Assembly: GCA_044892525.1 (NCBI GenBank)
Contig: CM097888.1
Location: forward strand, 62,868,001-62,932,000
DNA: 64,000 nucleotides
Origin: Schmidtea polychroa
Taxonomy: Eukaryota
Reading direction: 5' to 3'
Shown here: one piece after another, positions 11,763 to 53,997 of the stretch
Numbering within the stretch: position 1 is the first letter of the stretch
Layout of the letters: each line of letters opens with the position of its first letter
Translations under genes and position numbers: made by a program
Notes under the pieces: model-generated
The model's database searches: none
Seen by the model: the letters and a program-made list of their open reading frames with translations, nothing else
What the model was told of the DNA's origin: nothing

Positions 11763-25223
<13,461 letters not shown>

Positions 25224-38935: not shown

Positions 38936-39715
38936 TTAATACAATAATGAAATTCACATCGAATAACATTTTATTCACATTAAAAGTTATTTTAAAAGTT
39001 ATTTAAACAAACTTTATTTCTGAAATATATAAGTAATTTATTCATAAATAAATTAAATATAATGTATTGCACAGGCACTACATTAGCCCCCGCCCAAGTA
39101 CGGGGAGCGTATGCTGTTGCTGCTGCTGAGTAGTGTGTATATATACCCAACCAACACAACCCTCCCAACAAAAACATACCTCCATTACGCTTAAACCATT
39201 AGAAAAACAACCTAAAACCTATGTTTTTATAGTATTTTAACCCCATATTTTAAACAACAACCACCCTTAATCTTTAAAGCCTCAAACTCAAAAGCTTCAA
39301 ACTAAAAAGAGAATAGAAAAGAAAATGGCATTATGAAAAAGTTAGAGGGCTATTTGGGATAGGGCTATATACACACTACTTTTGATCGCAATCAAACTCC
39401 GGAGTTGATCTTTATCAGATTATTGATTTTAAATTATATAAATTAAAAAATAAATGAAAAATAGTAAAACTGCTCTGAGGGGACAGTGGTATTTTTTTTT
39501 GTTTTTTCACTGTCCCCTCAACAGTTTTTTTGATCCGGATCATTTTTTTATTTATCAACCTCTTTCGTTTATCAAATCTCTTCCAATAGCAGCACACCTT
39601 ATTATTCGCTTCTCGCTCGAATACGATTTCATCGGCGTTTTAAGCGTGCTGCTCGAAAGTACAAATGAATTCGAAAGTGAATTCGAAAGAGGTCCGAAAA
39701 CAACTGAGAAATAAA

Positions 39716-39788
39716 TGTGCACATTATGGAATCGATCCGGGGGTGTTCGAAAGACAGGTGGCGATAATTACCGGTTCGCCACCATCAC
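39716..39788 (-). ncRNA. tRNA-like Pol III cassette T4' (left-TIR mirror of T4)
   Basis: TGGCGAACCGG A-box-like motif, GGATCGATTCC B-box-like motif 43 nt downstream, GTG/CAC+A ends. Confidence 0.5.
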
Positions 39789-39952
39789 CCGTTTCAATAA
39801 TTTTTTTTTCATATTTATGTTTAAAAAATAAAATAAAATAAAATAAATAAAATAAAATAAAAATAAATAAAATATACAACTACTTTATAAATCTAAGATA
39901 CCCAAACTATTATTTTCAAATTTTTAATATTATTTTATGTTGAAAAAAAAAC

Positions 39953-40025
39953 AAACCACAGTTAAGATTTGAACCGCTATCCATTTGAACCACTGTGCCG
40001 GTCTAGCCCACTGCACTATCTGGTT
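39953..40025 (-). ncRNA. tRNA-like Pol III cassette T3' (left-TIR mirror of T3)
   Basis: TAGTGCAGTGG A box, GGTTCAAATCT B box, followed by a T run. Confidence 0.55.
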
Positions 40026-40123
40026 TTGGATTTTTGTCATTTTTTAGACTGTCACATTATGAAAATAAATATAAAAACATAAAAAATCAAAACAGGATAT
40101 CCAATAAAAAATTTTTTCTAAAA

Positions 40124-43100
40124 ATGAATTGTAATATTTGTAATAAAGTTTTTAAAAATAAAACTGGATTAATTTCTCACTTAAAATCGAAAGCTCATTT
40201 ATTAAAAGAAAACAATCTTAATGATACAAATTCAAAAGTTTGTCCTAAATGTAAAGGAAGATTTCTACATTCTGGATATAATAAACATTTTGAAAATTGT
40301 ATCGGGAAAAATAGAGAAATATTTACATGTCCTCATTGTAACTTTTCAACAAAAGTAAATTTCTATTATTTAGAACATATAAAAGAATGTAAAAATAAAA
40401 AACAAAATTCTGACGATGAGGAATGTCATTCAGAAGGAGAACCTGATTATGTTGAAAGAGAAAAATATAACTGGGATGATTTTAATCATGTAGATGAATT
40501 TCAATTAAAAATTAATGGACCTGCAACTCCTGGAGAATATATAAATAAAAATAAAAAAAATATTAAAAATTCTTTCACTGAAGCTTTAAAAAATTATAAA
40601 CCGACAAGGTATAATGTTATAAAATATAAAATTATAATCAAAGCAAAATACTGGCGAGGAGCAGAAGAAAAGACAACACCTTTAGATGTTGAAATTGGAA
40701 TACCCTTTAAATATTTATTTTCAACTAAAGGATTTGATAAAACCATCAAAGAAATAATTCAAGCAGTAGAAGCAAAACAAGAAGAGGTTGAAAATGAATT
40801 AGGAGATTCAAACTTAGTATTCAACTCTTTCCAAACTTTAGTGATTGATTATTGGAGAGGATTACCACCTAATCCTAAATCTTATATTCCTACACCCTTT
40901 AAATCTAAAAATGTTATAAACATACAGAATAATGATAACAAATGTTTCGTCTGGTCAATACTTGCACATTTACACCCTCAAGAATCAAACCCTCAAAGAG
41001 TTTCAAAATACAAACAATATGAAAATGAATTAATATTTCCCAAAGGATTCAAACATCCAATGAAACTAGAAGACATTCCAAAATTTGAAAGTTTAAATAA
41101 TCTTAAAATTAATATTTATGAACGTGTTAAAGGGAAACATGTTAATAGCAGAGAAATTATTCCAATTTATATTTCAGATTATGAAGTTAGAGATAACGAA
41201 CCCCAGGATAACACTAGGGAGATATATCTTTTAATCTTGGAACAACAAAATAATCAACATTATGTTTTAATAAAAAACTTTCAAGCTTTTACATCACCAG
41301 AGAATCCAACTAGTGGAGGAGGAACATGTAAAAGATGTCTTCATTATTCAACAACTAAAAACTCTATGATTAAACATACAAGATTTTGTGAAAAAGATGA
41401 TCCAGCTTTAATTAAAATGCCTAATAATCCCAAGATGTATTTTAAAAACTTTTCAAATTTACTACAAACAGTAGGAGTGCTTTATGGGGACTTTGAATCT
41501 ATAAATCGTAAACAAGATTTGGTTAAACAATATTTAAAAATAATAGAAAAAAATAAACTCATGGATTCCTGGAACTCCTCAGGAGAGAAGATGAAACCAG
41601 AGAGGATGAAAGCCTTTCTAAGAAAAAGGAATAAACCTAATAGTGTTAAAAAAACTAAACAATTACCATCTGCTTATAAATTATTATTTAAAAGTAATTA
41701 TCCTGAACTCATAGAATCTAGAGAATATACATTTCGAGGAATTTCAGAAACAGAAGTCTTGAATCATTTTACTAAAAGTATAAATGATCTAGAACATGAA
41801 ATATTTAAAGTATTAAAAACAAACTATCCTCAAAATATTTCTAATCAACAACAACAAGAATATGAAAACACTTCCAACTGTTGGATGTGTAAACAACCAT
41901 TTGAAGAGTCTCCGAATATAAAATTCCTCGATCATGATCATTTAAAAAAGGAAAATAATTATCGAGGAGCAGCTCATAAAAATTGTAATCTTAATTGTCA
42001 TACTCCTAAATTTGTACCTGTTATATTTCATAATCTTTTTGGTTATGACATACATCTATTTATTAAACATTTAGCAGCAAATGCTAAAAACTCTTTCAAA
42101 GTTATAGGACTTACAAAGGAAAAATATAAATCAGTTGAATATGGAAAATTAAAATTTATAGACTCGTTAAACTTTCTCCAAATGTCTCTAGATGGAATAG
42201 CTAAAACAATGAAACCAGAAGATTTTAAAATCACTCGAGAATTCTTGGAAAAAAATAATATTCCTCTAGAAGAATATTCTACATGCTTAGCAAAAGGAAT
42301 ATATCCTTATGACTATGTTGACTCGTTTGAAAGATATAATGAAACAAGTCTTCCTAGCCAAGAAGATTTCTCTTCACAACTTCAAAAATATCATATTACA
42401 AATCAAGAATATTCTCGAGCAAATAAAATTTGGGAATTATTCAAGTGTAAAACTTTAGGAGAATATACAAGTATGTATTTATCCTTGGATGTTTATATTC
42501 TAGCAGATTGCTTTGAAGAATTTACAAAATCTTTTGTTCTTAAACCTTACAATTATATAACAGCACCCTCTTTAGCTTGGGATACTTTATTATATACCAT
42601 TTGGACTTCAAATATAGAAGAAGCTGATAAAATTATAGATCTTTTAACTAACCTCGATATGTTTAATCTAATTAAAACAAACATTAGAGGAGGAGTCTCT
42701 TCAGTAATGGGGAATAGAGAAATAAAAGCTAGAAATGCAATAACTACTAGCAGAATGCTTTCAAAGACCTCTGATCCATATATAAAAATTAACAATGAGG
42801 AATTAAAAGAAATATTAGAAACAATGAAAAATCCTATATTTATACTTTATATAGATGCAACAGCTTTATATTCAGGAATTATGACTCAATATTTACCAAT
42901 GGGTGATTTCATTGAAATAGAATCATCAAAAGAACTTATAAAAGAAATACTTTCAACACCTAAAGATTCTCCAATAGGTTACTTTGTAGAATGTGACTTA
43001 TTATATCCAGATGATATAAAATCAGGAACAAGATATTTCCCATTAGCTCCTGTAAGAAGAAAGATTGATATCAACGAACTTTCTGAATGGCAAATCTCAC

Positions 43101-44350
43101 AAGATAAACCCCCAACAATGAAACTTCTTTGTGATCAAACAGATCGAAGGTTTTATCTTTGTCACTATAGACTCCTCCAATTTTATCTTTCACGAGGTAT
43201 GATATTAAAAAAAGTTCATAGTGTTATAAGATTTAAACAGAGGCCATTCATGAAAGCTTTTATCGAGGAGAACATTAGATGTCGAAACATTGCAAAAAGA
43301 GAAGGTAACCTTTTTAAAGATAATAATTATAAACTTTTAAACAATTCAGTCTTTGGGAAGACAATGGAGAATGTTGATAAATATACTCATATTGAACTCC
43401 TAACTAAGCCTACATTTAAAAACGCACAAGTATTTTCTGAAAGTCTTACTGCAATAGAACTGAAGAGTTTTGAGAAAACATACAACAAACCAATATTTAT
43501 AGGGTTTTCAATTTTAGAACTTTCAAAATTACAAATGTATGAAACATATTATAACATCTTACAACCTATATATGGTTCTAATATATTAATGCATGCAATG
43601 GATACAGATTCAAATCCTATACTTTCAAATTTAATAAATTCAACTGGAGAATTATTTTCATTTAAAGATGAAAAACCTTTTACTCCTATAGAAAATGGAA
43701 TATTTATTCGTGCTAAACAATATTCATACGAAACATTTAAAAACCCTGAATTTATAACCCGAGAAATTATATTTAAAACCACAGAAAAAGAGGAAATTAT
43801 TTCATTTAAATATCCTATATTCCCTAAAGGACCAGAGGGACAAGAAGAAAAACCTGTAAAGGATAACAGATGTAAAGGAATACAGAAATCCGTTGCAAAG
43901 AATCTTTCTCATCAAGATTATATAGATACATTGAATCCAAATCATAAAGATAAAATTGATGAAATACACCAACTTAAAAGTGAAAACCATGATATTTACT
44001 TGATAGAATCTCAAAAAGTATCATTATCAAATTATGATGATAAGAGATTCATCCTAAGTGATTTAAAGACAACTCTTCCTATAGGAAATAATTTAATACC
44101 GATAATAAAAAATCTAGAAAAGTTGAATAAGTTATATGATACAAAAATTACTGATCTTGATATTTATAATGTTGAAATTATTTATCCCGAGAGAGAAATC
44201 GAGAAGCCTTTATATTCTCAAGTTTTTAATCCTATATGTTTAGAACTTAAATATTTTAATACTGATCCTGAATATATAAAAGGTCTAAGTGATAAAGAAT
44301 TTAAAGATCATAAATTAATGATTCAAAGGTTGGCTTTCAACAATATTTAA
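40124..44350 (+). CDS. polB: Protein-primed family B DNA polymerase with N-terminal Zn fingers (about 1408 aa from ATG 40124)
   Basis: YGDFES (ExoI), DHDH..YRGAAHKNCNL, FHNLFGYD (ExoII), KGIYPYDY, YIDATALYS (A), KLLNNSVFGK (B), DTDS (C), CKGI, DDKRF. Confidence 0.97.
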   Translation: MNCNICNKVFKNKTGLISHLKSKAHLLKENNLNDTNSKVCPKCKGRFLHSGYNKHFENCIGKNREIFTCPHCNFSTKVNFYYLEHIKECKNKKQNSDDEECHSEGEPDYVEREKYNWDDFNHVDEFQLKINGPATPGEYINKNKKNIKNSFTEALKNYKPTRYNVIKYKIIIKAKYWRGAEEKTTPLDVEIGIPFKYLFSTKGFDKTIKEIIQAVEAKQEEVENELGDSNLVFNSFQTLVIDYWRGLPPNPKSYIPTPFKSKNVINIQNNDNKCFVWSILAHLHPQESNPQRVSKYKQYENELIFPKGFKHPMKLEDIPKFESLNNLKINIYERVKGKHVNSREIIPIYISDYEVRDNEPQDNTREIYLLILEQQNNQHYVLIKNFQAFTSPENPTSGGGTCKRCLHYSTTKNSMIKHTRFCEKDDPALIKMPNNPKMYFKNFSNLLQTVGVLYGDFESINRKQDLVKQYLKIIEKNKLMDSWNSSGEKMKPERMKAFLRKRNKPNSVKKTKQLPSAYKLLFKSNYPELIESREYTFRGISETEVLNHFTKSINDLEHEIFKVLKTNYPQNISNQQQQEYENTSNCWMCKQPFEESPNIKFLDHDHLKKENNYRGAAHKNCNLNCHTPKFVPVIFHNLFGYDIHLFIKHLAANAKNSFKVIGLTKEKYKSVEYGKLKFIDSLNFLQMSLDGIAKTMKPEDFKITREFLEKNNIPLEEYSTCLAKGIYPYDYVDSFERYNETSLPSQEDFSSQLQKYHITNQEYSRANKIWELFKCKTLGEYTSMYLSLDVYILADCFEEFTKSFVLKPYNYITAPSLAWDTLLYTIWTSNIEEADKIIDLLTNLDMFNLIKTNIRGGVSSVMGNREIKARNAITTSRMLSKTSDPYIKINNEELKEILETMKNPIFILYIDATALYSGIMTQYLPMGDFIEIESSKELIKEILSTPKDSPIGYFVECDLLYPDDIKSGTRYFPLAPVRRKIDINELSEWQISQDKPPTMKLLCDQTDRRFYLCHYRLLQFYLSRGMILKKVHSVIRFKQRPFMKAFIEENIRCRNIAKREGNLFKDNNYKLLNNSVFGKTMENVDKYTHIELLTKPTFKNAQVFSESLTAIELKSFEKTYNKPIFIGFSILELSKLQMYETYYNILQPIYGSNILMHAMDTDSNPILSNLINSTGELFSFKDEKPFTPIENGIFIRAKQYSYETFKNPEFITREIIFKTTEKEEIISFKYPIFPKGPEGQEEKPVKDNRCKGIQKSVAKNLSHQDYIDTLNPNHKDKIDEIHQLKSENHDIYLIESQKVSLSNYDDKRFILSDLKTTLPIGNNLIPIIKNLEKLNKLYDTKITDLDIYNVEIIYPEREIEKPLYSQVFNPICLELKYFNTDPEYIKGLSDKEFKDHKLMIQRLAFNNI

Positions 44351-44428
44351 TTTTTTAATAATAAAATGTCGACAATTAATTTAAGCAACTATAGCAACCT
44401 GATCTACTTTTTTAAAAATACACCCATT

Positions 44429-45025
44429 TTATAAATAAGAATTCTTTAACCATTTCTCCCGTTTAATTTTTTTAGAATATTCATTAGTTATAACATTAGT
44501 ACTTTTTAATCTATTAATATTATTTTTAATATCTTGTATTATTTGATTTGATTTCATTATTTCATCATCAGTTAAGATTCCATCTTCCAAAGCTTTTAAT
44601 TGAAATAAAAATAATTTAGAGATTCCTAATTCTATTGATAAACAAACTTCACGATATAAACTTTTCTTTTTAGAAGTATAAGATAGTGAAACTATTTCAG
44701 TTAGGAAACCATCAGCTACTGAAATACTTCCAAGTATTACAGGTGCAATTGTTAAAACTGGTAAAGTTATAGGTAAAATAACTGTTAATATTGCAGATGC
44801 AAATCCTAAAGAATAACCTATAACTTTTAAAACTGTATTCCCTTTATTCCATCTATTTTTAATTTTTTTATAATGCTTTAATAAATCTTGTAAATGTAAG
44901 GTTTCTGATTTAAATTCTTTTACTCTCATAATTTCAAGTTCTGTGGGAGCTGAAGGTCCCGAAGGTTTGGGGGAATAATATCTTGATGACAATTCTGGGT
45001 AAATTTTTTCTTTTACTTCTTCCAT
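44429..45025 (-). CDS. Polinton membrane-associated protein with YPEL and PSAP motifs, 198 aa
   Basis: Intact ORF; N-terminal IYPEL and PSAP; hydrophobic stretch VIGYSLGFASAILTVILPITLPVLTIAPVILG; flanking helical regions. Confidence 0.8.
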   Translation of the reverse strand: MEEVKEKIYPELSSRYYSPKPSGPSAPTELEIMRVKEFKSETLHLQDLLKHYKKIKNRWNKGNTVLKVIGYSLGFASAILTVILPITLPVLTIAPVILGSISVADGFLTEIVSLSYTSKKKSLYREVCLSIELGISKLFLFQLKALEDGILTDDEIMKSNQIIQDIKNNINRLKSTNVITNEYSKKIKREKWLKNSYL

Positions 45026-45033
45026 TTTAATAA

Positions 45034-46011
45034 TTAAAAAAATAAGATTTTATTATCTGGTACCAATACTCGGATATCATAAGAGACTCTTGTTGAGAGA
45101 ATGTCTTTATACAATTCCATCAATGCTTTACGAACTTCATCAACATCAACCTTTTTTTCATAAAATATTAAATCTATATATTGTACAAGTGTGCTTTTAA
45201 AAATAATATTCTTACTTTTAACTTTATGTAGTCCATGTGAATGAGTATTAACATACCAATCTCAGTGTGGTAAATCATAACTAGTCATTATAACATCACC
45301 CTTTTCAAGCTTACTATTATAATCACATTTCACAAACCATTTCATTCTTTCACCATCATCATCAAATAAAAAGAAATAAGGATCAATAATCTTTACAACC
45401 ATAAAAACACTCCATTCTTTACTATTTGTTGTTATTAAAGTTGGTTCTATAAAATGTTTATATGTATGGGGTAATAATGTTTTATTCTGTTCTAATTCAG
45501 CAGCTCTTTTTCTAATACTATGTGTGGTGTTAATGTGTGTTCCATGAGACTCTAAATTTGAAATTCTTTTATTAAATGATGTAATCATCTCATTTATTAT
45601 TTTATATATTGTATTAAATTTAGTATTCATAATTTGTTTATCTTTAGAATTTAATATGCTAGTATTTAACTTTACAACTTGTTCAGTTAACAGACTTTGT
45701 AACTTGTCAAATTTATCATTAAATCGTTGTTCGATATTATTAAGCTTTGATTCCATTGAATCCATTTTTGTTGTTAATGAACTTTCAATTCTTGTTGTTG
45801 TTAAATCAGTATAATTTTTATTAGCAGCATCACCTTCATCAATTGGTAAAGATAAATCTTTTATCTTGTGTCCATTTAAATTTAAATCTCCTTTCATTGA
45901 ATCACCTCTTTCATTAATATATTTATTTTCTGTTAAAGTTAATATTTCTTCTGTATTAAACCCTGTTTTTATTGTTCCACCACCTCTATTACAAGGAATA
46001 TAAGAACTCAT
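45034..46011 (-). CDS. Fibre-like protein (249 aa to TGA 45262-45264; frame stays open 75 more codons to TAA 45034-45036)
   Basis: GDSMKGDLNLNGHKIKDLSLPIDEGDAANKNYTD (phage fibre-type repeat) followed by heptad coiled coil; extension checked codon by codon. Confidence 0.65.
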
Positions 46012-46035
46012 TTATTAATAATTTAAAATGAATCT

Positions 46036-46806
46036 TCAAACCTGTTTCAGATGTAAATACATTGAAATCTCTTCTCCATTAAAATCAATCAATTCTCCTT
46101 CTTGGTTAAGAATTTTAAAATTAATATCCATTATATATTTTCTACATAAAGGCAAATAATTTGGAGGATTCATTCTTTCAACTATTTTATATCCCATAGG
46201 AACTGTGTTTGAGGGAAAGGAATATAAAACATTTGTTTGTTTACCATTATTATAAGAACCTGTTATACAATCGCAATGAATATTTATTGTGTTTGTATTT
46301 ATTATTTTTATAATATTTTCTGATGTTATATTCTCAACTATAGGTGTGATATAATGGTTTCGTGTAAATCCTAAAATTGTTCTAAAGAAACTATTATTTT
46401 GAAAATGAATTCCTATATTCTCTAAAGTCATTATACATTTTGAAGTTGGTAAATCCATTTTAATTTTAATGGCTCCATTTGTTTTTTTAGAAAGTATATT
46501 ATTTAAATCTTTTATCTCATAAGCTCCAGGTTCGATTGTTATTATAATCTTATCTGTAGATTTTGGGCTTATATAATAAAATATGTTATTATCTTTAGTT
46601 ATATTAAAAATAGTATTATAAGCACAAAACCATAATAGACCTAATTCATAATTTAAATCTTGATCTAATTTTATTGAATCTTGAAAGTTTATAGTAAAGT
46701 CTGATTCTTTTGAATTTATAGATAAAGTTCTTGAATATTTATCTGACATTATGTTTACCATTTTTTTAAAATTATCTTCCAGAAGGTTGCGAAACTCCAT
46801 TTTCAT
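46036..46806 (-). CDS. Minor capsid protein (penton, single jelly roll)
   Basis: YELGLLWF..YNTIFNI...NN.FYY, IEPGAYEIKDLN, INIHCDCITGSY.NG...VLYSF, YLPL...I...I.NQEG..IDFNGE pattern typical of Polinton pentons. Confidence 0.9.
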   Translation of the reverse strand: MKMEFRNLLEDNFKKMVNIMSDKYSRTLSINSKESDFTINFQDSIKLDQDLNYELGLLWFCAYNTIFNITKDNNIFYYISPKSTDKIIITIEPGAYEIKDLNNILSKKTNGAIKIKMDLPTSKCIMTLENIGIHFQNNSFFRTILGFTRNHYITPIVENITSENIIKIINTNTINIHCDCITGSYNNGKQTNVLYSFPSNTVPMGYKIVERMNPPNYLPLCRKYIMDINFKILNQEGELIDFNGEEISMYLHLKQV

Positions 46807-47296
46807 AATAGAGATTTTAAATCATTATAAATTTCTTGGATTAAGGAAGTGAAACCTTCTCCTTTGGACAGAGTCCCTTGAGATTTATTCAATCTATACA
46901 AAACATATAAGCTTAAAATACCACATATTTTAGTATTATTAGGTTGAACTTGTAAAGAATTAAAAGTATAGTCTCTCTTCGAGCTTACTCCGGACAGATA
47001 GTCTTCAACTTCTTTAGTGGGTTTAATCCCAAAGAATCAAAGTATATAGATTTATTATATATACAAACCCAATGAGATCCTTTTTCATTTGAATTTTGAT
47101 AATTTATAATAATATTCAGGGGACTTCGTTTCTTTTGAGTGTCTTCTTTCAGAATATCTTTCAGACTTGATAATTCATCATTCATTAATATTTTTATTTT
47201 TAAATTTAAATAATTTGCATAATCTTTTAAATCAAAATTTGTTTTTGCATTTATTCCAAATGTTTTTAAAAAATCTAATATTGAAGGACTAGTCAT
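46803..47296 (-). pseudogene. Adenain-type maturation cysteine protease with a 1-bp frameshift near 47030
   Basis: GSHWVC and YFDS in ORF 46985-47296; the shifted frame continues GIKPTKEVEDYL...QVQPNNTKICG to a TGA at 46803-46805 that overlaps the penton ATG. Confidence 0.92.
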
Positions 47297-48145
47297 TTTA
47301 TATATTTATTAAATTTATCTTTTGAAATTATTCCATGTTTTAATAATTCTTTAGAAATCTTTAAAATATCAGAATCTAAATTATTATGACCTGCTTTTTT
47401 AGCTGCTAATAGTTTTCTTAATTCAATAAAAAGGTTGATTGGGTTTGGTTTAACCCTTATACCATCACCTTCTTTAACAACATAACTCTTTTCATTTCTA
47501 TCTAAATATTTCTTTAAATCTTGAATGTGTTTTGCTTTTGAACTAGCTTTTATTGATCTTATAAAATTTAAATATTTTTTAATTTCTTCAACATCATCTG
47601 AAGGATATCCACAAAGTAATCTATAAAAATCATCTGTAAATTCAAAGTCTAAATATTCATTATTATAAACATTTTGTGAATGAATATGTGATTTATTTTC
47701 TGGAGTTGTATATAAAGTAAAGTTTTGTTTATTGATTGTTATTATTGAATATCCTTCAGAATTAATATGAAATGTGGGTTTAATTGAATCACTTAAACCT
47801 TCTCTAATTTTAGGATTAACTTTAAGAGGTTTTGTTTTTAAAAACATTTCTTCTTCTTCCACATTAGAGGTTCTTCTACGTTTTCTTTGATTTCTTTCAG
47901 AATGACTTTCAGGATGATTTTCAGTGGATTCTTTCTCCCACTCCAATTCTTTTATTTTTTGTTTTTTATCTTTTTTTTGCTTGCTCATTTAATCCTTTTA
48001 TAGCTTTAATTGTTGGTCCTTGTTGTTTTTGGATTAGCTCATTTAATATTATAGATTCAGCATGTTGAGTTGTATCTTTTTTATTATACTTGTTTTGTTC
48101 TGATTGTAATTTTTTTAAAAGTGCTAATCTTTCTTCATATACCAT
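47293..48145 (-). pseudogene. Conserved Polinton structural-module protein (PZ-type; label tentative) with a frameshift in an A8 run at 47971-47978
   Basis: A 59-codon ORF from ATG 48145 (MVYEERLALL...QQGPTIKAIKGL) joins ORF 47293-47988 if one A is removed; C-terminal LRKLLAAKKAGHNN..I..ELLKHGII motif. Confidence 0.65.
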
Positions 48146-48167
48146 TTTAATGGTATCAAAAATGGTA

Positions 48168-48701
48168 TCATGGTTCCTTCCAAGGTTTTACATATAATCC
48201 TTTACCATTTTTAGTTTTACAAAGGCATCCATTCTTTAAAGATTTATACATTTTTTTTAAATCATCTTTATCTTTTGAAGATAAAGATTCAGATGTTGAA
48301 ATTTGATTTTTTAAAAAATCATTTAAACCTCTGCCTTTATATGGATCAAGATAGAGACCTTTTCCTTTAGCTTGCCCTACCTTCATTTTCTCGATTTCAG
48401 TTTGTAGTTTTTCTTTTTCTAGGTCTGTCTTTTGAGATTCTTTAGCTTTTTGAACTGTAGTTGCAATTCCTCCAGCTATTCCAGCAGCACCTGATAAACC
48501 AGCAATGATTGCAGGTATTAAAGCAGCTAATGGAAGAATGCCGCCTTCTTTAGTAGAAGAGCCCTTCAGCTTCGCTCTAACTTGTTCTTTTACATGTTTT
48601 CCAATAAAATATTTCTTACCGTCAATTACTACTGATTTATTTTTATTTGATTTTATTAATTCTTGCAAAGATTCTTCAGTAGAGGAACTCTTCGAGGTCA
48701 T
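48168..48701 (-). CDS. Adenovirus pX/mu-like core or membrane-active protein, 177 aa
   Basis: EGGILPLAALIPAIIAGLSGAAGIAGGIA resembles the adenovirus pX C-terminus GGILPLLIPLIAAAIGAVPGIA; repeated G[KR]GL motifs. Confidence 0.8.
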   Translation of the reverse strand: MTSKSSSTEESLQELIKSNKNKSVVIDGKKYFIGKHVKEQVRAKLKGSSTKEGGILPLAALIPAIIAGLSGAAGIAGGIATTVQKAKESQKTDLEKEKLQTEIEKMKVGQAKGKGLYLDPYKGRGLNDFLKNQISTSESLSSKDKDDLKKMYKSLKNGCLCKTKNGKGLYVKPWKEP

Positions 48702-48716
48702 TTTATAATAAATAAA

Positions 48717-49526
48717 ATGGATGTACGAAGTCCAATAATTTGGAAACCAATTTTAAATAGACATAAATCTAAATTTAATAATAAAGTATTTCCTGATAAT
48801 TTTAGATTATTAATTGTTGGATCTTCTGGATGTGGAAAGAATGTACTTGTTTTGAAAATGTTACTTGAAGATGGTTTTTTAGATTATAATAATTTAATCT
48901 TTTACTCTACAACTATAAATCAACCAGAATTACAACTTTTGAAATGTGGATTTGAAAATAAATTAACTAAAAAAGCAATAATTGATATTTTTAAAAATCA
49001 ACATAGATGTCCTGAAGAAGTTTTTCAACCTTGTGATATGGTTGATTGGTATAAGGAAAAGATTTTAGAATCAGATATTAGTAATAAAAATGATTATATT
49101 TGTGAAGATCAGGGGCAGGAGGCAATTCAAGTTTTATTCTCTAATAAACCTGAAGATGTTTTACATTGTGATTTACTTCCTAAAGATAAAAAGATTCTAG
49201 TTATATTTGATGATGTTGTTAATATGAAAAATCAAGAGATTCAAAAGAGTTACTTTACAAGAGGAAGACATAATAATTGTAATGTTATTTATATATCTCA
49301 AACTTATTATGCTTTAGATAAAAACTCTATAAGAAATAATTCTAATTGTTTTATATTTTTTAAATTAGATCGCCGTGATAAGAATATGATTTATAATGAT
49401 TTATTTTCAAATGTTGAACCTGATAAGAATATGTTTGATATGTTTGTTGATAATCATTGGAGAGAAAAATATAATTATATTTATTTGGATAGAGAAGAAG
49501 CTGAAATATGGAAAAGTTTATTTTAG
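48717..49526 (+). CDS. A32/FtsK-HerA-type packaging ATPase
   Basis: Walker A GSSGCGKN (N instead of T/S), Walker B LVIFDD, RGRHNNCNVIYISQ and IRNN motifs. Confidence 0.93.
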   Translation: MDVRSPIIWKPILNRHKSKFNNKVFPDNFRLLIVGSSGCGKNVLVLKMLLEDGFLDYNNLIFYSTTINQPELQLLKCGFENKLTKKAIIDIFKNQHRCPEEVFQPCDMVDWYKEKILESDISNKNDYICEDQGQEAIQVLFSNKPEDVLHCDLLPKDKKILVIFDDVVNMKNQEIQKSYFTRGRHNNCNVIYISQTYYALDKNSIRNNSNCFIFFKLDRRDKNMIYNDLFSNVEPDKNMFDMFVDNHWREKYNYIYLDREEAEIWKSLF

Positions 49527-49537
49527 AGCTTGTCGAC

Positions 49538-50919
49538 TTAGAAATCTGTTTTCTGTAGTTCATTATTATAAAATCTATCTAATATTTTTTCATTATTTAA
49601 ATCAATGATGCTATATGTTATTGGAGTTGTATAATTTATTTTATTTATAATAAAAATTTCATTTGTCCATTTTGCTGTGAATCCTTTTTCAAATTTATTT
49701 TTATATTTAAATATTCTTACTCGGTCACCAATTTTAAACTTTGGTTTTTCATTTACCACTTTAACATTTATAAGTTTAATGCTTTCAGGATTCAAGGAAG
49801 CATTTAAAGGTGTTGATTTTATAGAACTATGTACATCATTATTATATTCATTTACAATCTTTTGTAACAATTCATTGTTCCATTTTTGTTTTCCAATAGC
49901 CGTAAAATATTTCCACATTTTATTTTTTAATGTTCTATTTAATCTTTCAACCACAACTGCTTTTCCTTCGTTTTCTGTTGAATATAATTTAATATCATTT
50001 TCATTTAAAAACTTTGTAAAAACTTTGTTATAAAATTCTGTTCCTTTATCACACCATAAATATTTTGGAATTCTTTGATATTGTTCAAATATATTTTCAA
50101 ATGCTTCTGTAATAGAATATCCTGTTTTATTTTCTAAACATCTTGCAAAGGCAAATCTTGTATATAAATCTATTACAGTTAAAATTATTTTATATTTTTC
50201 AGGGTCTGATGATTTGGTTGGCATAAAGACTAAATCTGCAGACCATGTTTGATCTTTTTCATGTACTTGAACTTTTAAATATTTTTTATTTTTTCTAAAT
50301 TCATGGTGTAATTCGTTGGCATATTTTATTTGTGATTCTGTTGGGGTTAATAAACTAGTCTTGGATATATTCTTGAGGGATCTTTCAGCATCTGCTTGTT
50401 CAATAATCTTTTTATTAGCAACATCTTTTGCCATCCTTGGTAAACTAGCACCTATGAAAATCTTACCTTTCATTGCTAATTTAACTAGAGCTCTTTGAAT
50501 CTTTCCTTGGGTTGATGGATTTTGGATATTATTTAAATCATGTATTAAATTCACATCTGCAACATGTCTATCTCTAAGATCTTCTGAATTGTATGCAATA
50601 TCATGTTTTAAAGCTGCTTGATCAATTCTATTTATTGGTTCTTCTCCTTGTTTGGGATTATTATTTTCATCTAATCTAATATCTAATCTTGTTCCTGGCC
50701 AGTATAATTGTGTTTAAATAAATGTCTTTCACCTGGATATTTTTCTGTAGTAAAAGGTTTTAATATTGAAGATGTCACTTTTGAAGATTGTAGGTCGCCT
50801 CCGGCTCGTGGAATCATGTCGCCTCCTATATGTTTTTTAGTTTTTAGATGACTTGCTTTATGATGTCTTGTAACTTGACAATTGCAACTTTCAAATCTCC
50901 AATATTTATTTAGAGACAT
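49538..50919 (-). pseudogene. PLA2-integrase fusion (about 460 aa) with a 1-bp frameshift near 50699
   Basis: HNYTG|PGTRLD..PINRIDQAALKHDIAY..RHVAD runs without a stop into ELHHEFRK..WSADL..WCDKGTEF..VVERLNRTLK and KFKIGDRVRI..FEKG..WT.EIF..ELQK. Confidence 0.88.
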
Positions 50920-50948
50920 TTTAAAATGTTAAAATATCAGGGATTATA

Positions 50949-52235
50949 TCAAGAATCTCCCCTAACATTTTCAATAATTGAAATCTTTCCACCATATAAT
51001 TTCATTTCTATTTTCTTTTCTTCTAATATTAATGTATATACTTTAGCTTTGAAATTAGAATCCTTTGTTATATGAAGTGTAACATCAACTTTATTTATGG
51101 CTAGGCGATCATCTTGGTCTGAAACATTTATACAAAATATAGAATATAAATTTTTGAAATCTTCTAAACTTAATTGCGGTTCAACTTTGAAATCATAACA
51201 TGTTTCAATATAATTTAGATATGGGAATATGTTTTCATTATTTTCAATATTAAATTCCATTCTATTTATTGGATAATAAGAACTATTTAATTGAATTTGG
51301 ATTGTTTTTAAATTATCAACTCCAATCTTTTGAATAAACAAGTTGTTATTTTTTTGGAAAGATGAATCTACTTCTTTGAATCCAATCAAGATATATCTTG
51401 GTCGGTATGCTAAATTTGCTACCTTTATAGAATATGTTGAACCCTCTGTCATACTAAATTCACTACAGATTCTATTTAAATAATTTACATTTATAGACTT
51501 GTTGGAATTTAATCTTTCAAGGAGTTTGATTTCAGAATGTGGATTTAATGTCCATTCAGGTATATGCAATTCAAGTGTTGATATTTTTAATTTAGCTGTT
51601 GTATCCTTATCTCCATAGAACAATCTTTTATCACCTTCTACTCTATTACAAACTAATTCTATAAAAACATTATGAAGTATACGATTATAGTTTTGAAGGA
51701 ATCCAAACAAGTGTTTTAATTCAAAATAACCTTCAAATTTTTTAGATTTATAAAGTTCAACTCTTTTATAGTAACCATAATTTATATCTAAACCATCTTT
51801 ATCTAAATCTCCTTTATTAACATCAGGAATCCAGCCTGTTAATTCACCATATTCATTTTTATAATCACAACCAGTCAAAATAAAATTTAACATTGTAGAA
51901 TATACTCCCGGATGCAAAACAGTTTCAATTTCTGATGATCCTAGTTTTAATCTCATGTTGGAGAATAAATTTGGAAAGAAATTATTTTCTAGGGTTATAT
52001 CTTTGTTTGCTTCAATTTCTAATTCGATTTTATAATATAATTTGGCATTACAAATATCTATAGGGTTTGATGTTTGAAGAGATTGAAAAACTATATCACC
52101 CCTACGATTTAAGTTTGCAATAGATCCTGAAGTTGGGGAGATTTTAAGTACATCGTTTTTCTTGATTTCATGAGTAAATTCTTTATTATAATCAAGATTT
52201 AATTTATTTTTTTCTTGAATTTTTATAATATTCAT
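50949..52235 (-). CDS. Major capsid protein (double jelly roll), 428 aa
   Basis: LENNFFPNLFSNMRLKLGSSEIE, ELKHLFGF, PRYILIGF, IQIQLNSSYYP, FKNLYSIFCINVS pattern of Polinton MCPs; intact. Confidence 0.9.
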   Translation of the reverse strand: MNIIKIQEKNKLNLDYNKEFTHEIKKNDVLKISPTSGSIANLNRRGDIVFQSLQTSNPIDICNAKLYYKIELEIEANKDITLENNFFPNLFSNMRLKLGSSEIETVLHPGVYSTMLNFILTGCDYKNEYGELTGWIPDVNKGDLDKDGLDINYGYYKRVELYKSKKFEGYFELKHLFGFLQNYNRILHNVFIELVCNRVEGDKRLFYGDKDTTAKLKISTLELHIPEWTLNPHSEIKLLERLNSNKSINVNYLNRICSEFSMTEGSTYSIKVANLAYRPRYILIGFKEVDSSFQKNNNLFIQKIGVDNLKTIQIQLNSSYYPINRMEFNIENNENIFPYLNYIETCYDFKVEPQLSLEDFKNLYSIFCINVSDQDDRLAINKVDVTLHITKDSNFKAKVYTLILEEKKIEMKLYGGKISIIENVRGDS

Positions 52236-52291
52236 TTTTATATATTAAAATTTACACACACAAAATAGGATTAATTAAATATATTATGTAA

Positions 52292-52365
52292 GACATTATA
52301 GCATAGTGGGAATAGGCTTCAATTTTATCACCGGGAGTACCGGGTTCAATTTTCGATTTTGGTCA
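52292..52365 (+). ncRNA. tRNA-like Pol III cassette T1
   Basis: A box TAGCATAGTGG at 52299, degenerate B box GGTTCAATTTT at 52343, GAC/GTC+A ends, T7 after. Confidence 0.55.
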
Positions 52366-52534
52366 ATTTTTTTCGATATTTTTTTTCAACGGAATCTGAT
52401 TCAGCGTACTGATTTTAGTATATATTTAAATTTTCAGATGGATCTGAGTGGTAGTTGTCGAGAAAATGAATAATTAATTATTAATTTCATCAATAAATAG
52501 TCACACATTAACAACTTATTTTATATTGAGTATA

Positions 52535-52607
52535 GCTCTAATAGCTTAGTGGTAATAGCACTCGACTGCATTGCCAATACCAATGGGTTCAAATCCCATT
52601 TCGGTCA
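52535..52607 (+). ncRNA. tRNA-like Pol III cassette T2 (tRNA-Cys-like layout, unpaired anticodon stem)
   Basis: A box TAGCTTAGTGG at 52542, B box GGTTCAAATCC at 52586, perfect T arm ATGGG-TTCAAAT-CCCAT, 73 nt, T8 terminator at 52608-52615. Confidence 0.75.
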
Positions 52608-52778
52608 TTTTTTTTCAAATATTTTTTTAACGAAATATTGATCAGCATACTCGATTTAGTACTTGTACAAATTTTTAAGGAGATTGGTCAACGGCAACTC
52701 TTGGAAATTTAAGATCAAAAACGTTTTAACTTAAGCTACCAAAAATTAATATATCCAATAAAAAAAATATTTATAAAA

Positions 52779-52973
52779 ATGGATGAGTTAAAAGAAAGAA
52801 TGAGAAATGAATTGAATGAAGTTAAACATAAGAGAATGAAAAGAAGAGAAGAAGAACCATTAGAATACATCAAAGAGTTGATGGTAGATAATGAAAAGTA
52901 TCGACATTTTTATATGAAGGCTGTAGATGTTGCTGATATAAGATTGAAGAAAATGAAACAATTACAGGAATGA
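52779..52973 (+). CDS. Small charged helical Polinton protein, 64 aa, unknown function
   Basis: TAAAAATG start; upstream motif shared with polB; stop lies at the inner TIR edge. Confidence 0.6.
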   Translation: MDELKERMRNELNEVKHKRMKRREEEPLEYIKELMVDNEKYRHFYMKAVDVADIRLKKMKQLQE

Positions 52974-52984
52974 CAAAAATCCAA

Positions 52985-53057
52985 ACCTAGATAGCGCAGT
53001 GGGCTAGACCGGCACCGTGGTTCAAATGGATAGCGGTTCAAATCCTAACTGTGGTTA
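52985..53057 (+). ncRNA. tRNA-like Pol III cassette T3 (in right TIR)
   Basis: A box TAGCGCAGTGG at 52992, B box GGTTCAAATCC at 53035, (A)ACC/GGT(T) ends, T8 after. Confidence 0.7.
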
Positions 53058-53202
53058 GTTTTTTTTCAACATAAAATAATATTAAAAATTTGAAAATAAT
53101 AGTGTGGGTATCTTAGATTTATAAAGTAGTTGTATATTTTATTTTATTTTATTAATTATTTTATTTTTAAACATAAATATGAAAAAAAAATTATTGAAAC
53201 GG

Positions 53203-53275
53203 GTGATGGTGGCGAACCGGTAATTATCGCCACCTGTCTTTCGAACACCCCCGGATCGATTCTTTAATGTGCACA
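53203..53275 (+). ncRNA. tRNA-like Pol III cassette T4 (in right TIR)
   Basis: TGGCGAACCGG at 53210, GGATCGATTCT at 53253, 8-bp hairpin GGTGGCGA/TCGCCACC, GTG/CAC+A ends, weak TTTATTT tail. Confidence 0.5.
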
Positions 53276-53997
53276 TTTATTTCTCAGTTGTTTTCGGACC
53301 TCTTTCGGATTCACTTTCGAATTCATTTGTACTTTCGAGCAGCACGCTTAAAACGCCGATGAAATCGTATTCGAGCGAGAAGCGAATAATAAGGTGTGCT
53401 GCTATTGGAAGAGATTTGATAAACGAAAGAGGTTGATAAATAAAAAAATGATCCGGATCAAAAAAACTGTTGAGGGGACAGTGAAAAAACAAAAAAAAAT
53501 ACCACTGTCCCCTCAGAGCAGTTTTACTATTTTTCATTTATTTTTTAATTTATATAATTTAAAATCAATAATCTGATAAAGATCAAATAGCCCTCTAACT
53601 TTTTCATAATGCCATTTTCTTTTCTATTCTCTTTTTAGTTTGAAGCTTTTGAGTTTGAGGCTTTAAAGATTAAGGGTGGTTGTTGTTTAAAATATGGGGT
53701 TAAAATACTATAAAAGTATAGGTTTTATGTTGTTTTTCTAATGGTTTAAGCATAATGGAGGTATGTTTTTGTTGGGAGGGTTGTGATGGTTGGGTATATA
53801 TACACACTACTCTGCTGCTGGTACTGGTGTTGATGGTTCTGGTGCTGATGATGTGGTTGGTGCTGTTCTGTTGGTGTTGTTTCTGTTGGTGCTTGTGCTG
53901 AAGATGGTGCGGATGCTTGAAGAAGGCGCGTGTCGAGCAGTCAGGCATACGCTGGTTGCTGATGTTGCTGTGTGTGCAGTTGGTGATGGTGCTGAAG

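What the first reader, a model, noticed from the sequence alone, without database searches (positions are those of the whole stretch)
52292..53275. Array of tRNA-derived Pol III cassettes encoded by a Polinton (candidate VA-RNA-like system)
Seen: four different 73-74 nt units (T1 52292, T2 52535, T3 52985, T4 53203), all on + and pointing to the right terminus. Each has an A box about 7 nt from its 5' end (TAGCATAGTGG, TAGCTTAGTGG, TAGCGCAGTGG, TGGCGAACCGG). Each has a B-box-like motif 43-44 nt later, which is tRNA spacing. A T-rich tail follows directly: T7-T8 for T1-T3, only TTTATTT for T4. The outer base pairs differ in sequence yet still pair (GAC/GTC, ACC/GGT, GTG/CAC; T2 partial), while anticodon arms do not pair. 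Established: adenovirus VA RNAs, EBV EBERs and MHV68 tRNA-like TMERs are viral Pol III RNAs with A/B boxes, and Polintons are considered relatives of adenoviruses. Inference: these are non-decoding RNAs kept by the element (RNAi/dsRNA-sensor decoys, tRNA mimics) or TFIIIC-binding insulators. I do not recall such an array described in Polintons, but cannot check the literature here.
Basis: partly seen in the sequence, partly recalled or inferred. Interest (0 to 1): 0.92.

Follow-up and report, generated by a model that had tools for sequence, protein, structure and literature searches.

The report
Decayed tRNA-gene relics inside a Polinton
The four units are real remnants of tRNA genes carried by a virus-like Polinton transposon, two of them inside its terminal repeats. 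They no longer fold like tRNAs, two are private to this copy, and nothing yet shows a selected VA-RNA-like function.

Summary
The sequence observation holds. T1-T4 each have an A box, a B box 43-44 nt later and, for T1-T3, a T7-T8 run. Six such composites occur in the window against 0.035 expected by chance.

Corrections to the finding:
- T3 and T4 lie inside the 0.85-0.9 kb terminal inverted repeat of a 14.7 kb Polinton (39129-53811). Each is therefore mirrored on the minus strand at the left end, so there are six units, all pointing outward.
- T1 and T2 are two diverged tandem copies of a ~245-nt unit. They are 70% identical evenly across head and flanks, and they are absent from all six sister copies I could fetch.
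- Only T2 reaches the Rfam tRNA threshold (32.4 bits against 29). ARAGORN finds none. Cloverleaf pairing across eight units (48% of cells) equals shuffled and slid controls, and no compensatory changes appear.
- More distant Polintons show no tRNA-like module.

Among six T3 copies the A and B boxes vary less than the rest (4/24 against 21/51 columns, p=0.04). T3 as a whole is the most diverged segment of the repeat.

Best reading: non-decoding relics of captured tRNA genes that may still bind TFIIIC or Pol III. The VA-RNA-like reading is not supported but not excluded. tRNA genes in Polinton-like viruses are already published.

The parts
39129..53811 (.). Polinton/Maverick element, 14,683 bp, with AG...CT termini
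   Evidence: Inverted repeats; termini read; gene content.
39123..39128 (.). Left copy of the putative 6-bp target-site duplication CTGCTG. The right copy is 53812-53817.
   Evidence: The site is a CTG repeat, so the exact length of the duplication cannot be fixed.
39129..40041 (.). Left terminal inverted repeat. It contains T4' and T3' on the minus strand.
   Evidence: 92% mean column identity over the whole aligned stretch, non-repeat inner flank included; 97-100% in most segments.
52969..53811 (.). Right terminal inverted repeat. It contains T3 and T4 on the plus strand.
52292..52365 (+). T1: degenerate tRNA-like unit with a good A box, a B box with 2 mismatches and a T7 tail
   Evidence: No Rfam tRNA hit at E<=10. 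ARAGORN finds it only at an 80% threshold.
52535..52607 (+). T2: tRNA pseudogene-grade unit, the only one above the Rfam tRNA threshold. T arm 5/5 pairs, acceptor 5/7, anticodon stem 2/5. Isotype is indeterminate.
   Evidence: RF00005 32.4 bits against a gathering score of 29. ARAGORN default finds none. Relaxed ARAGORN gives a different anticodon.
52254..52745 (+). Block private to this copy: two ~245-nt tandem units, each a tRNA-like head plus about 170 nt of flank
   Evidence: Units 69.8% identical, z=10; head 50/70, 3' flank 72/105, 5' flank 25/35. Absent from L001, L006, L007, L019, L020 and L021. No blastn match elsewhere in the window or in any locus.
52779..52973 (+). Small 64-aa coiled-coil-like ORF between T2 and the TIR. 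It is present in sister L021 and absent from five other sisters.
   Evidence: No homologue in the protein search. No Pfam match.
52985..53058 (+). T3: tRNA-derived unit at the inner edge of the right TIR. It has a consensus A box, two B-box motifs 16 nt apart and a T8 tail.
   Evidence: Copies in L001, L006, L007, L019 and L020.
39952..40025 (-). T3': mirror copy of T3 in the left TIR, about 100 nt upstream of and divergent from the PolB start
53203..53276 (+). T4: most degenerate unit. Relaxed A box, B box with 2 mismatches (1 in the left copy), an 8-bp hairpin at the D-arm position and no T4+ run directly behind it.
   Evidence: Not found by Rfam, ARAGORN or the T1-T3 covariance model. 97% identical in L007.
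39715..39788 (-). T4': mirror copy of T4 in the left TIR
40124..44350 (+). [quoted passage not shown]
   Evidence: 45% identical to P0039. That protein's aligned region carries PF03175 DNA_pol_B_2. Zinc fingers. The window protein itself gives no direct Pfam or PDB polymerase hit.
48663..49526 (+). Packaging ATPase (ORF bounds)
   Evidence: PF04665 Pox_A32, E=5.9e-8.
49538..50919 (-). Integrase gene (rve core with an N-terminal extension), interrupted in this copy. It appears as two ORF pieces of 78 and 338 aa, where sister L006 has one 463-aa product. At least one interruption; kind not determined.
50949..52235 (-). Double jelly-roll major capsid protein, 428 aa
   Evidence: PF21738, E=9.7e-27. 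27 homologues found.
53471..53518 (.). Strong hairpin in the TIR, mirrored in the left arm: perfect 12-bp stem core (the predicted fold extends it) with an A-rich loop
   Evidence: z=-6.9. One stem pair is changed on both sides in L007.

Best explanation
The units are relics of tRNA genes that this Polinton sub-lineage picked up. None is a working tRNA.

T3 and T4 entered the terminal inverted repeat in the ancestor of a group of closely related copies. They are therefore carried at both ends, facing outward, next to the PolB and capsid gene starts.

T1 and T2 are an older tandem duplication of a tRNA gene plus its flanks. The pair is found only in this copy and is decaying evenly.

What survives best is the internal Pol III promoter (A and B boxes) and the T-run terminator, not the cloverleaf. 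If the units do anything, the most likely mechanism is at the DNA level. TFIIIC would bind the B and A boxes, with or without Pol III producing short transcripts of about 75-90 nt that are unstructured and non-decoding.

Shown: tRNA origin, position in the TIR, distribution among copies, and lack of conserved structure. Inferred: TFIIIC or Pol III binding. Not shown: any transcript or any benefit to the element.
For: - tRNA origin: six A+B composites with tRNA spacing against 0.035 expected. The strict A box occurs only at T1-T3. T2 passes RF00005.
- Non-decoding: ARAGORN finds none. T1, T3 and T4 have no Rfam tRNA hit at E<=10. Cloverleaf cells pair at 48%, the same as controls.
- No conserved RNA structure: RNAalifold on six T3 copies gives -7 kcal/mol, a positive covariation term and 0 compensatory pairs.
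- TIR location and mirroring.
- T1/T2 private and neutral: absent from L001, L006, L007, L019, L020 and L021. Identity is equal in the head (71%) and flanks (69-71%).
- Lineage-restricted: no tRNA or composite in L002, L005, L008-L018, L022 or L023.
- Boxes conserved more than stems in T3: 4/24 against 21/51 variable columns, Fisher p=0.04.
- The host copy is itself decaying: its integrase gene is interrupted.
Against: - Sister copies are so close (TIR 83-97% by segment) that shared T3/T4 says little about selection in either direction.
- The box-versus-stem contrast rests on six related sequences and p=0.04.
- T4 and the GC-rich TIR core are strikingly conserved (97%) in an AT-rich genome. 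This could reflect a function I have not identified.
- T3 is the fastest-diverging TIR segment: 6 of 13 arm-to-arm mismatches fall in 74 of about 840 nt. This could be relaxed constraint, GC-to-AT pressure or transcription-associated mutation; the last would imply activity.
- No expression or occupancy data were available. The host genome could not be searched for donor tRNA genes or for extra copies.
Confidence: 0.6

Rival explanations
1. DNA-level boundary or promoter-proximal elements. In this reading the TIR-embedded T3/T4 (with three B boxes per arm) are kept because TFIIIC bound there insulates the integrated element from flanking chromatin, or keeps the adjacent PolB and capsid promoters open. 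Any RNA made would be irrelevant.
For: - The units occupy symmetric, outward-facing positions in both TIRs.
- T3 lies about 50-100 nt from the starts of the two outermost genes and is divergent from them.
- T3 has a duplicated B box.
- Boxes are conserved more than stems.
- From established knowledge (my memory, not tested here): TFIIIC-bound B-box clusters in inverted repeats act as heterochromatin boundaries in fission yeast, and tRNA genes act as barriers in budding yeast and mammals.
Against: - The units are absent from relatives with 73% capsid identity and beyond, so they are not needed by Polintons in general.
- The statistical support is weak.
- Symmetry follows automatically from lying in a TIR.
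- T1/T2 cannot be explained this way.
Confidence: 0.2
2. One reading: selected, non-decoding Pol III RNAs that act like adenovirus VA RNAs or gammaherpesvirus TMERs, as decoys for dsRNA sensors or RNAi, or as tRNA mimics.
For: Promoter and terminator anatomy is intact enough for Pol III in T1-T3. T3/T4 are shared by all sister copies that reach that region.
Against: - There is no conserved fold or covariation.
- Fold energies are ordinary except for T2.
- No Rfam viral Pol III family matches.
- The units are about 74 nt and lack the long stems that VA RNA function depends on.
- No hairpins lie between unit and terminator as in TMERs.
- T1/T2 are private to this copy and decay evenly.
- The module is absent from other Polintons.
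Confidence: 0.1
3. T1-T2 is an ordinary insertion of a host repeat (a tRNA-derived SINE/MITE-like element or a captured piece of a host tRNA gene cluster) into one decaying Polinton copy. It is unrelated to T3/T4.
For: - It is private to this copy. It is bounded by a short AAAATT-like direct repeat when compared with L021.
- Its two units diverged by 30%, far more than the sister copies differ. The pair therefore pre-dates its arrival here.
- The copy has an interrupted integrase gene.
Against: - No second copy occurs in the 49 kb of host flank or in any fetched locus.
- The tRNA-like head is followed at once by a terminator and does not start the insert, unlike a SINE.
- The direct repeat is AT-rich and could be chance.
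Confidence: 0.35
4. Working tRNA genes that supplement the host pool, as proposed for tRNAs of Polinton-like viruses, virophages and giant viruses.
For: T2 is just above the Rfam tRNA gathering score. There is published precedent in PLVs (PMC12220804).
Against: T2 has a 2/5 anticodon stem and a 5/7 acceptor stem and is rejected by ARAGORN at default settings. The other three units fail every tRNA test.
Confidence: 0.03

Closest known systems
tRNA genes encoded by Polinton-like viruses and virophages (PMC12220804 section 16; predicted tRNA flags in MELD viruses, PMC8502044 Fig. 6)
   Same: tRNA-type Pol III genes carried by members of the same broad virus and element class, presumably captured from hosts.
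   Different: The published cases pass Rfam or ARAGORN as tRNAs with an assignable isotype, and a codon-supply role is proposed for them. Here ARAGORN finds none and only one of six units barely passes Rfam. Four of the six sit inside the TIRs, a placement I did not find described.
tRNA pseudogenes and tRNA-derived SINE heads
   Same: Retained A and B boxes at tRNA spacing with broken stems. T1/T2 behave as a neutrally decaying duplicated unit.
   Different: A T-run terminator follows each head directly, so there is no SINE body or tail in the transcript. No multi-copy family was detected in the sequence available.
Adenovirus VA RNAs
   Same: Pol III type-2 promoter (internal A and B boxes) in a linear dsDNA element related to adenoviruses.
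   Different: VA RNAs are about 160 nt with long conserved stems and sit internally in the genome. These units are about 74 nt without conserved or stable folds. No Rfam match other than tRNA was found.
Murid gammaherpesvirus 68 TMERs (tRNA-like plus miRNA hairpins)
   Same: Viral, non-aminoacylated, tRNA-like Pol III units arranged in a cluster near one genome end.
   Different: TMER tRNA-like parts fold as cloverleaves and are followed by pre-miRNA hairpins before the terminator. Here the cloverleaf is lost and the terminator follows at once.
TFIIIC-only sites and B-box boundary elements (ETC sites; fission-yeast IR boundaries)
   Same: B-box-bearing sequences in inverted repeats flanking a chromosomal domain. 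In T3 the boxes are conserved more than the RNA features.
   Different: Occupancy and boundary activity are entirely untested here. This resemblance comes from my own knowledge, not from a tool result.

Membership tests
tRNA (Rfam RF00005) | Covariance-model score at or above the gathering score (29 bits) | tested here: not met
   Met only by T2 (32.4 bits). T1, T3, T4 and the mirrored copies give no hit at E<=10.
tRNA (Rfam RF00005) | Four-stem cloverleaf kept across copies | tested here: not met
   48.2% of cells pair, equal to shuffles and slid registers. D stem 31%, anticodon stem 35%, T stem 50%, acceptor stem 66%. ARAGORN finds 0 genes.
Pol III type-2 (tRNA-type) transcription unit | A box near +8, B box 30-60 nt downstream, T-run terminator | tested here: met
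   T1-T3 meet it fully. T4 has degenerate boxes at spacing 43 and lacks a T4+ run directly behind it.
Pol III type-2 (tRNA-type) transcription unit | Transcription by Pol III and TFIIIC occupancy | not testable with these tools
   No expression or ChIP data were available, and the host was not identified.
Adenovirus VA RNA and other viral Pol III ncRNA families | Match to the family model; long conserved stems (about 160 nt for VA) | tested here: not met
   The permissive Rfam scan of 51800-53800 gives no viral Pol III RNA family. Units are about 74 nt with fold z-scores of +0.3 to -0.6, except T2 at -2.5.
MHV68 TMER-like unit | Cloverleaf tRNA-like head followed by miRNA hairpins within one Pol III transcript | tested here: not met
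   The terminator follows each head directly and the cloverleaf is not kept.
tRNA-derived SINE | Head at the 5' end of the insert, body and tail transcribed, many dispersed copies with target-site duplications | tested here: inconclusive
   The head is internal to the T1-T2 insert and is followed by a terminator. No other copy was found in 49 kb of host flank or 93 kb of loci. The host genome was not available.
Polinton/Maverick | Protein-primed PolB, rve integrase, DJR capsid protein, packaging ATPase | tested here: met
   rve, DJR and A32 found by Pfam. PolB assigned by 45% identity to P0039, which carries PF03175. The adenain-like protease and the penton protein were not identified.
Polinton/Maverick | Long TIRs, 5'-AG...CT-3' termini, 6-bp target-site duplication | tested here: met
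   TIRs of 843 and 913 bp, AG/CT termini, CTGCTG on both sides. The site is a CTG repeat, so the duplication length is not certain.
PLV/virophage-encoded functional tRNA | Detectable by ARAGORN or the Rfam gathering score, with an assignable anticodon | tested here: not met
   ARAGORN finds 0. T2's anticodon differs between the Rfam alignment and relaxed ARAGORN.

The most novel reading that the evidence does not exclude
A Polinton lineage has built outward-facing TFIIIC/Pol III modules into both terminal inverted repeats. Each arm would carry two A boxes and three B boxes. They would work at the DNA level as chromatin boundaries or as nucleosome-free platforms next to the PolB and capsid promoters, or as a source of short Pol III RNAs that interfere with silencing of the integrated element. 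The unusually fast divergence of the T3 body between conserved boxes would then be a footprint of active Pol III transcription.
Probability: 0.2. Interest if true: 0.7.

Novelty: new variant of a known kind. Interest (0 to 1): 0.35.

Why it matters
If the TIR-embedded units bind TFIIIC or are transcribed, they would be the first Pol III modules described in Polinton termini. They would give a concrete handle on how an integrated virus-like element manages host chromatin and silencing. They would also parallel the Pol III RNAs of adenoviruses and herpesviruses.

If they are plain relics, as the present evidence mostly suggests, they still record host tRNA gene capture by a Polinton. They also serve as presence/absence markers for tracing copies of this family. 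The practical lesson is that A/B-box anatomy alone does not indicate a kept RNA system.

Tried and rejected
- **Chance resemblance:** rejected, with 6 composites against 0.035 expected.
- **Working tRNAs:** rejected.
- **One four-unit tandem array:** rejected. Only U1/U2 align (z=10). U3 and U4 align with neither each other nor U1/U2 (z 0.3-2.8).
- **IMG/VR scans:** no relatives from the capsid protein, a T4 hairpin pattern or a T3 double-B-box pattern.
- **JGI metagenome scan:** a capsid alignment gave 11 short loci with no tRNA-like module.
- **Small ORF 52779-52973:** the protein search found no homologue. Its only relative was seen by eye in L021.
- **Covariance model from T1-T3 copies:** it found nothing new in the window or in 22 loci, and it did not recover T4.
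- **Alternative fold for T3:** RNAalifold found no supported structure.
- **Host identification:** failed. The window's capsid protein is not in the protein collection. All close relatives are unnamed ENA, Logan or JGI metagenome contigs with about 2-3x coverage.
- **PolB identity:** the window protein gives no direct Pfam or PDB hit. It was assigned through homologues instead.
- **Not available:** tRNAscan-SE and R-scape.

Full report
**1. What is there**

The region 52292-53275 contains four units of about 74 nt on the plus strand.
- The strict A-box pattern TRGCNNARTGG occurs three times in the whole 64-kb window, at T1, T2 and T3. The expectation is 0.65 and no shuffle reaches three.
- I scanned for a relaxed A box followed 36-51 nt later by a B box with at most two mismatches. 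The scan returns T1, T2, T3 and T4 with spacings of 44, 44, 43 and 43 nt, plus two further units on the minus strand near 39.7-40.0 kb.
- That makes six composites against a mean of 0.035 in 200 simulated sequences.
- T1-T3 are followed directly by T7-T9 runs. T4 has only TTTATTT, with a T4 run about 15 nt later.

**2. Context**

The units lie in a Polinton spanning 39129-53811.
- The termini read AG...CT and are flanked by CTGCTG on both sides. The insertion site is a CTG repeat, so the exact duplication length is uncertain.
- The terminal inverted repeats are 39129-40041 and 52969-53811.
- Pfam identifies an rve integrase, a double jelly-roll capsid protein and an A32-type ATPase.
- The 1408-aa protein next to the left repeat has no direct polymerase hit. 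It is 45% identical to P0039, whose aligned part carries PF03175.
- The integrase gene of this copy is interrupted. It appears as two ORF pieces, where sister L006 has a single 463-aa product.
- The host flanks hold piggyBac-like and hAT-like transposase ORFs, WD40 and papain-type protease exons, and about 26-30% GC. The host is therefore a eukaryote, but I could not identify it.

**3. Corrections to the anatomy**

- T3 and T4 sit inside the right inverted repeat. Each therefore has a mirror copy in the left repeat: T3' at 39952-40025 and T4' at 39715-39788, both on the minus strand. At both ends the units point outward.
- T3' lies about 100 nt upstream of the PolB start and is divergent from it.
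- In sister copies T3 lies about 50 nt from the capsid gene start and is likewise divergent.
- T1 and T2 are not independent. They are the heads of two tandem ~245-nt units that align at 69.8% identity (z=10).
- The tRNA-like head (50/70) is no better conserved than the 3' flank (72/105) or the 5' flank (25/35).
- T3 resembles T1/T2 only at the level expected for tRNA-derived sequences. T4 resembles none of them.

**4. Are they tRNAs?**

- ARAGORN finds none in the window.
- Rfam finds only T2, at 32.4 bits against a gathering score of 29. Its T arm is perfect, its acceptor stem has 5/7 pairs and its anticodon stem is broken.
- In a permissive scan (E<=10) T1, T3 and T4 give no tRNA hit, and no viral Pol III RNA family appears.
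- Relaxed ARAGORN recovers T2 at 90% and T1 at 80%. T3 appears only among obvious noise at 70%, and T4 never appears.
- T1, T3 and T4 fold no better than shuffles; T2 has z=-2.5.
- I laid the canonical cloverleaf on eight units (T1, T2 and six T3 copies). It pairs 48.2% of cells, identical to shuffles and to slid registers.
- RNAalifold on the six T3 copies gives a weak consensus with no compensatory pair.

**5. Distribution**

- The capsid protein has 27 homologues, all from unnamed metagenome contigs. The nearest cluster, at 90% identity or more, has nine members.
- I fetched six contigs of that cluster. In L001, L006, L007, L019 and L020 the capsid gene start abuts T3 directly, with no T1, T2 or small ORF.
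- In L021 the capsid gene is followed directly by a homologue of the small ORF, again without T1/T2.
- The T1-T2 block (about 52254-52745) is therefore private to the window's copy among those seen. It has no blastn match anywhere else available.
- Its two units differ by 30% while sister copies differ by a few percent. The pair must therefore have diverged before it arrived here.
- T4 is present and 97% identical in the one sister contig that reaches it, L007.
- Relatives with 73% capsid identity (L005) and more distant Polintons show no tRNA by ARAGORN or Rfam and no A/B composite. These are L002/L009, L008, L010-L018, L022 and the complete element in L023.
- Two of the sister copies (L019, L020) have capsid products called at 248 and 215 aa instead of 431. 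The family therefore includes decaying copies.

**6. Signs of constraint**

- Among six T3 copies, 4 of 24 A-box and B-box columns vary against 21 of 51 elsewhere (Fisher p=0.04).
- T3 as a whole is the most diverged part of the repeat. It is 92% identical between the two arms of this element while other segments are 97-100%, and 81-85% identical to the sisters.
- By contrast, the spacer just behind its terminator is 100% conserved and T4 is 97% conserved.
- This pattern fits three explanations that I cannot separate: relaxed constraint on the RNA body with some constraint on the promoter, GC-to-AT pressure on a GC-rich island, or transcription-associated mutation.

**7. Interpretation**

- The best-supported account is that these are relics of captured tRNA genes. 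They are non-decoding, and their promoter and terminator anatomy is better preserved than any RNA feature.
- T3/T4 became part of the inverted repeat in a recent ancestor. T1/T2 are a private passenger in a copy whose integrase gene is already interrupted.
- If any activity remains, I expect TFIIIC binding with or without short Pol III transcripts. That step is inferred, not shown.
- The VA-RNA/TMER-like reading lacks the structure, conservation and distribution it needs, but it cannot be excluded without expression data.
- A DNA-level boundary role is the most interesting reading still open.

**8. Literature**

- tRNA genes in Polinton-like viruses and virophages are documented: 558 predicted tRNAs in about 8,300 genomes, with a codon-supply hypothesis (PMC12220804).
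- tRNA genes are also flagged in related mid-size linear dsDNA viruses (PMC8502044).
- Three full-text searches and a check of the nematode Polinton survey (PMC10748475) found no description of degenerate tRNA-like modules inside Polinton inverted repeats.
- I therefore rate this a new variant of a known kind with modest interest.

Interrupted genes are reported by count only.

Noticed in passing
window 53471-53518 (mirror in the left TIR, about 39470-39520): Very strong hairpin in the TIR: perfect 12-bp stem core (the predicted fold extends it) with an A-rich loop, DNA fold z=-6.9. In sister L007 one stem pair is changed on both sides (G-C to A-T) and another becomes G-T, so the stem is kept. 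The weak Rfam miRNA hits here are far below threshold.
   Followed up: partly
window 53337-53404: A second long-range stem of about 11-12 bp in the GC-rich TIR core. A G-U pair in the window is A-U in L007, and L007 has a 43-nt insertion just after the 3' strand. The core (about 53195-53420) also carries six TTTCGRA-like motifs.
   Followed up: no
window 39345-39395: The left TIR holds a 51-nt piece missing from the right TIR. It contains an inverted copy of the ~20-nt element terminus, so the outermost ~250 bp of the left arm is bracketed by inverted terminus-like sequences (pair I14).
   Followed up: no
window 49538-50919 and L006 1414-2805: The sister's integrase product is 463 aa, with a precomputed Pfam hit to a parvovirus-type phospholipase A2 family (PF08398) in front of the rve core. 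This is an unusual fusion. In the window the same gene is interrupted and appears as two ORF pieces.
   Followed up: partly
window 40124-40330: The Polinton PolB starts with C2H2-type zinc fingers (PF12874, E=1.4e-5). Most of its relatives at about 30% identity instead carry an Endonuclease VII domain.
   Followed up: no
window 8462-9663, 27437-29180, 16242-17660: Two piggyBac-like transposase regions, each split over two ORFs, and a hAT-like ORF in the host flank. The neighbourhood is transposon-rich.
   Followed up: no
window 21960-22753: Papain-family cysteine protease in two ORFs separated by about 38 nt, probably a very short intron. This may be a clue to the host lineage.
   Followed up: no
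L002 5436-5515 and L022 4496-4575: A related Polinton family has a hairpin scoring 48.6 bits (E about 6e-7) against Rfam mir-754. That is below the family's gathering score of 84, but the hairpin is identical in two independent contigs.
   Followed up: no
window 53700-53948 and the flanks of the element: The Polinton is inserted in a CTG/CAG repeat that reads as a Gln/His-rich ORF on the minus strand. It may have disrupted a host coding exon.
   Followed up: no
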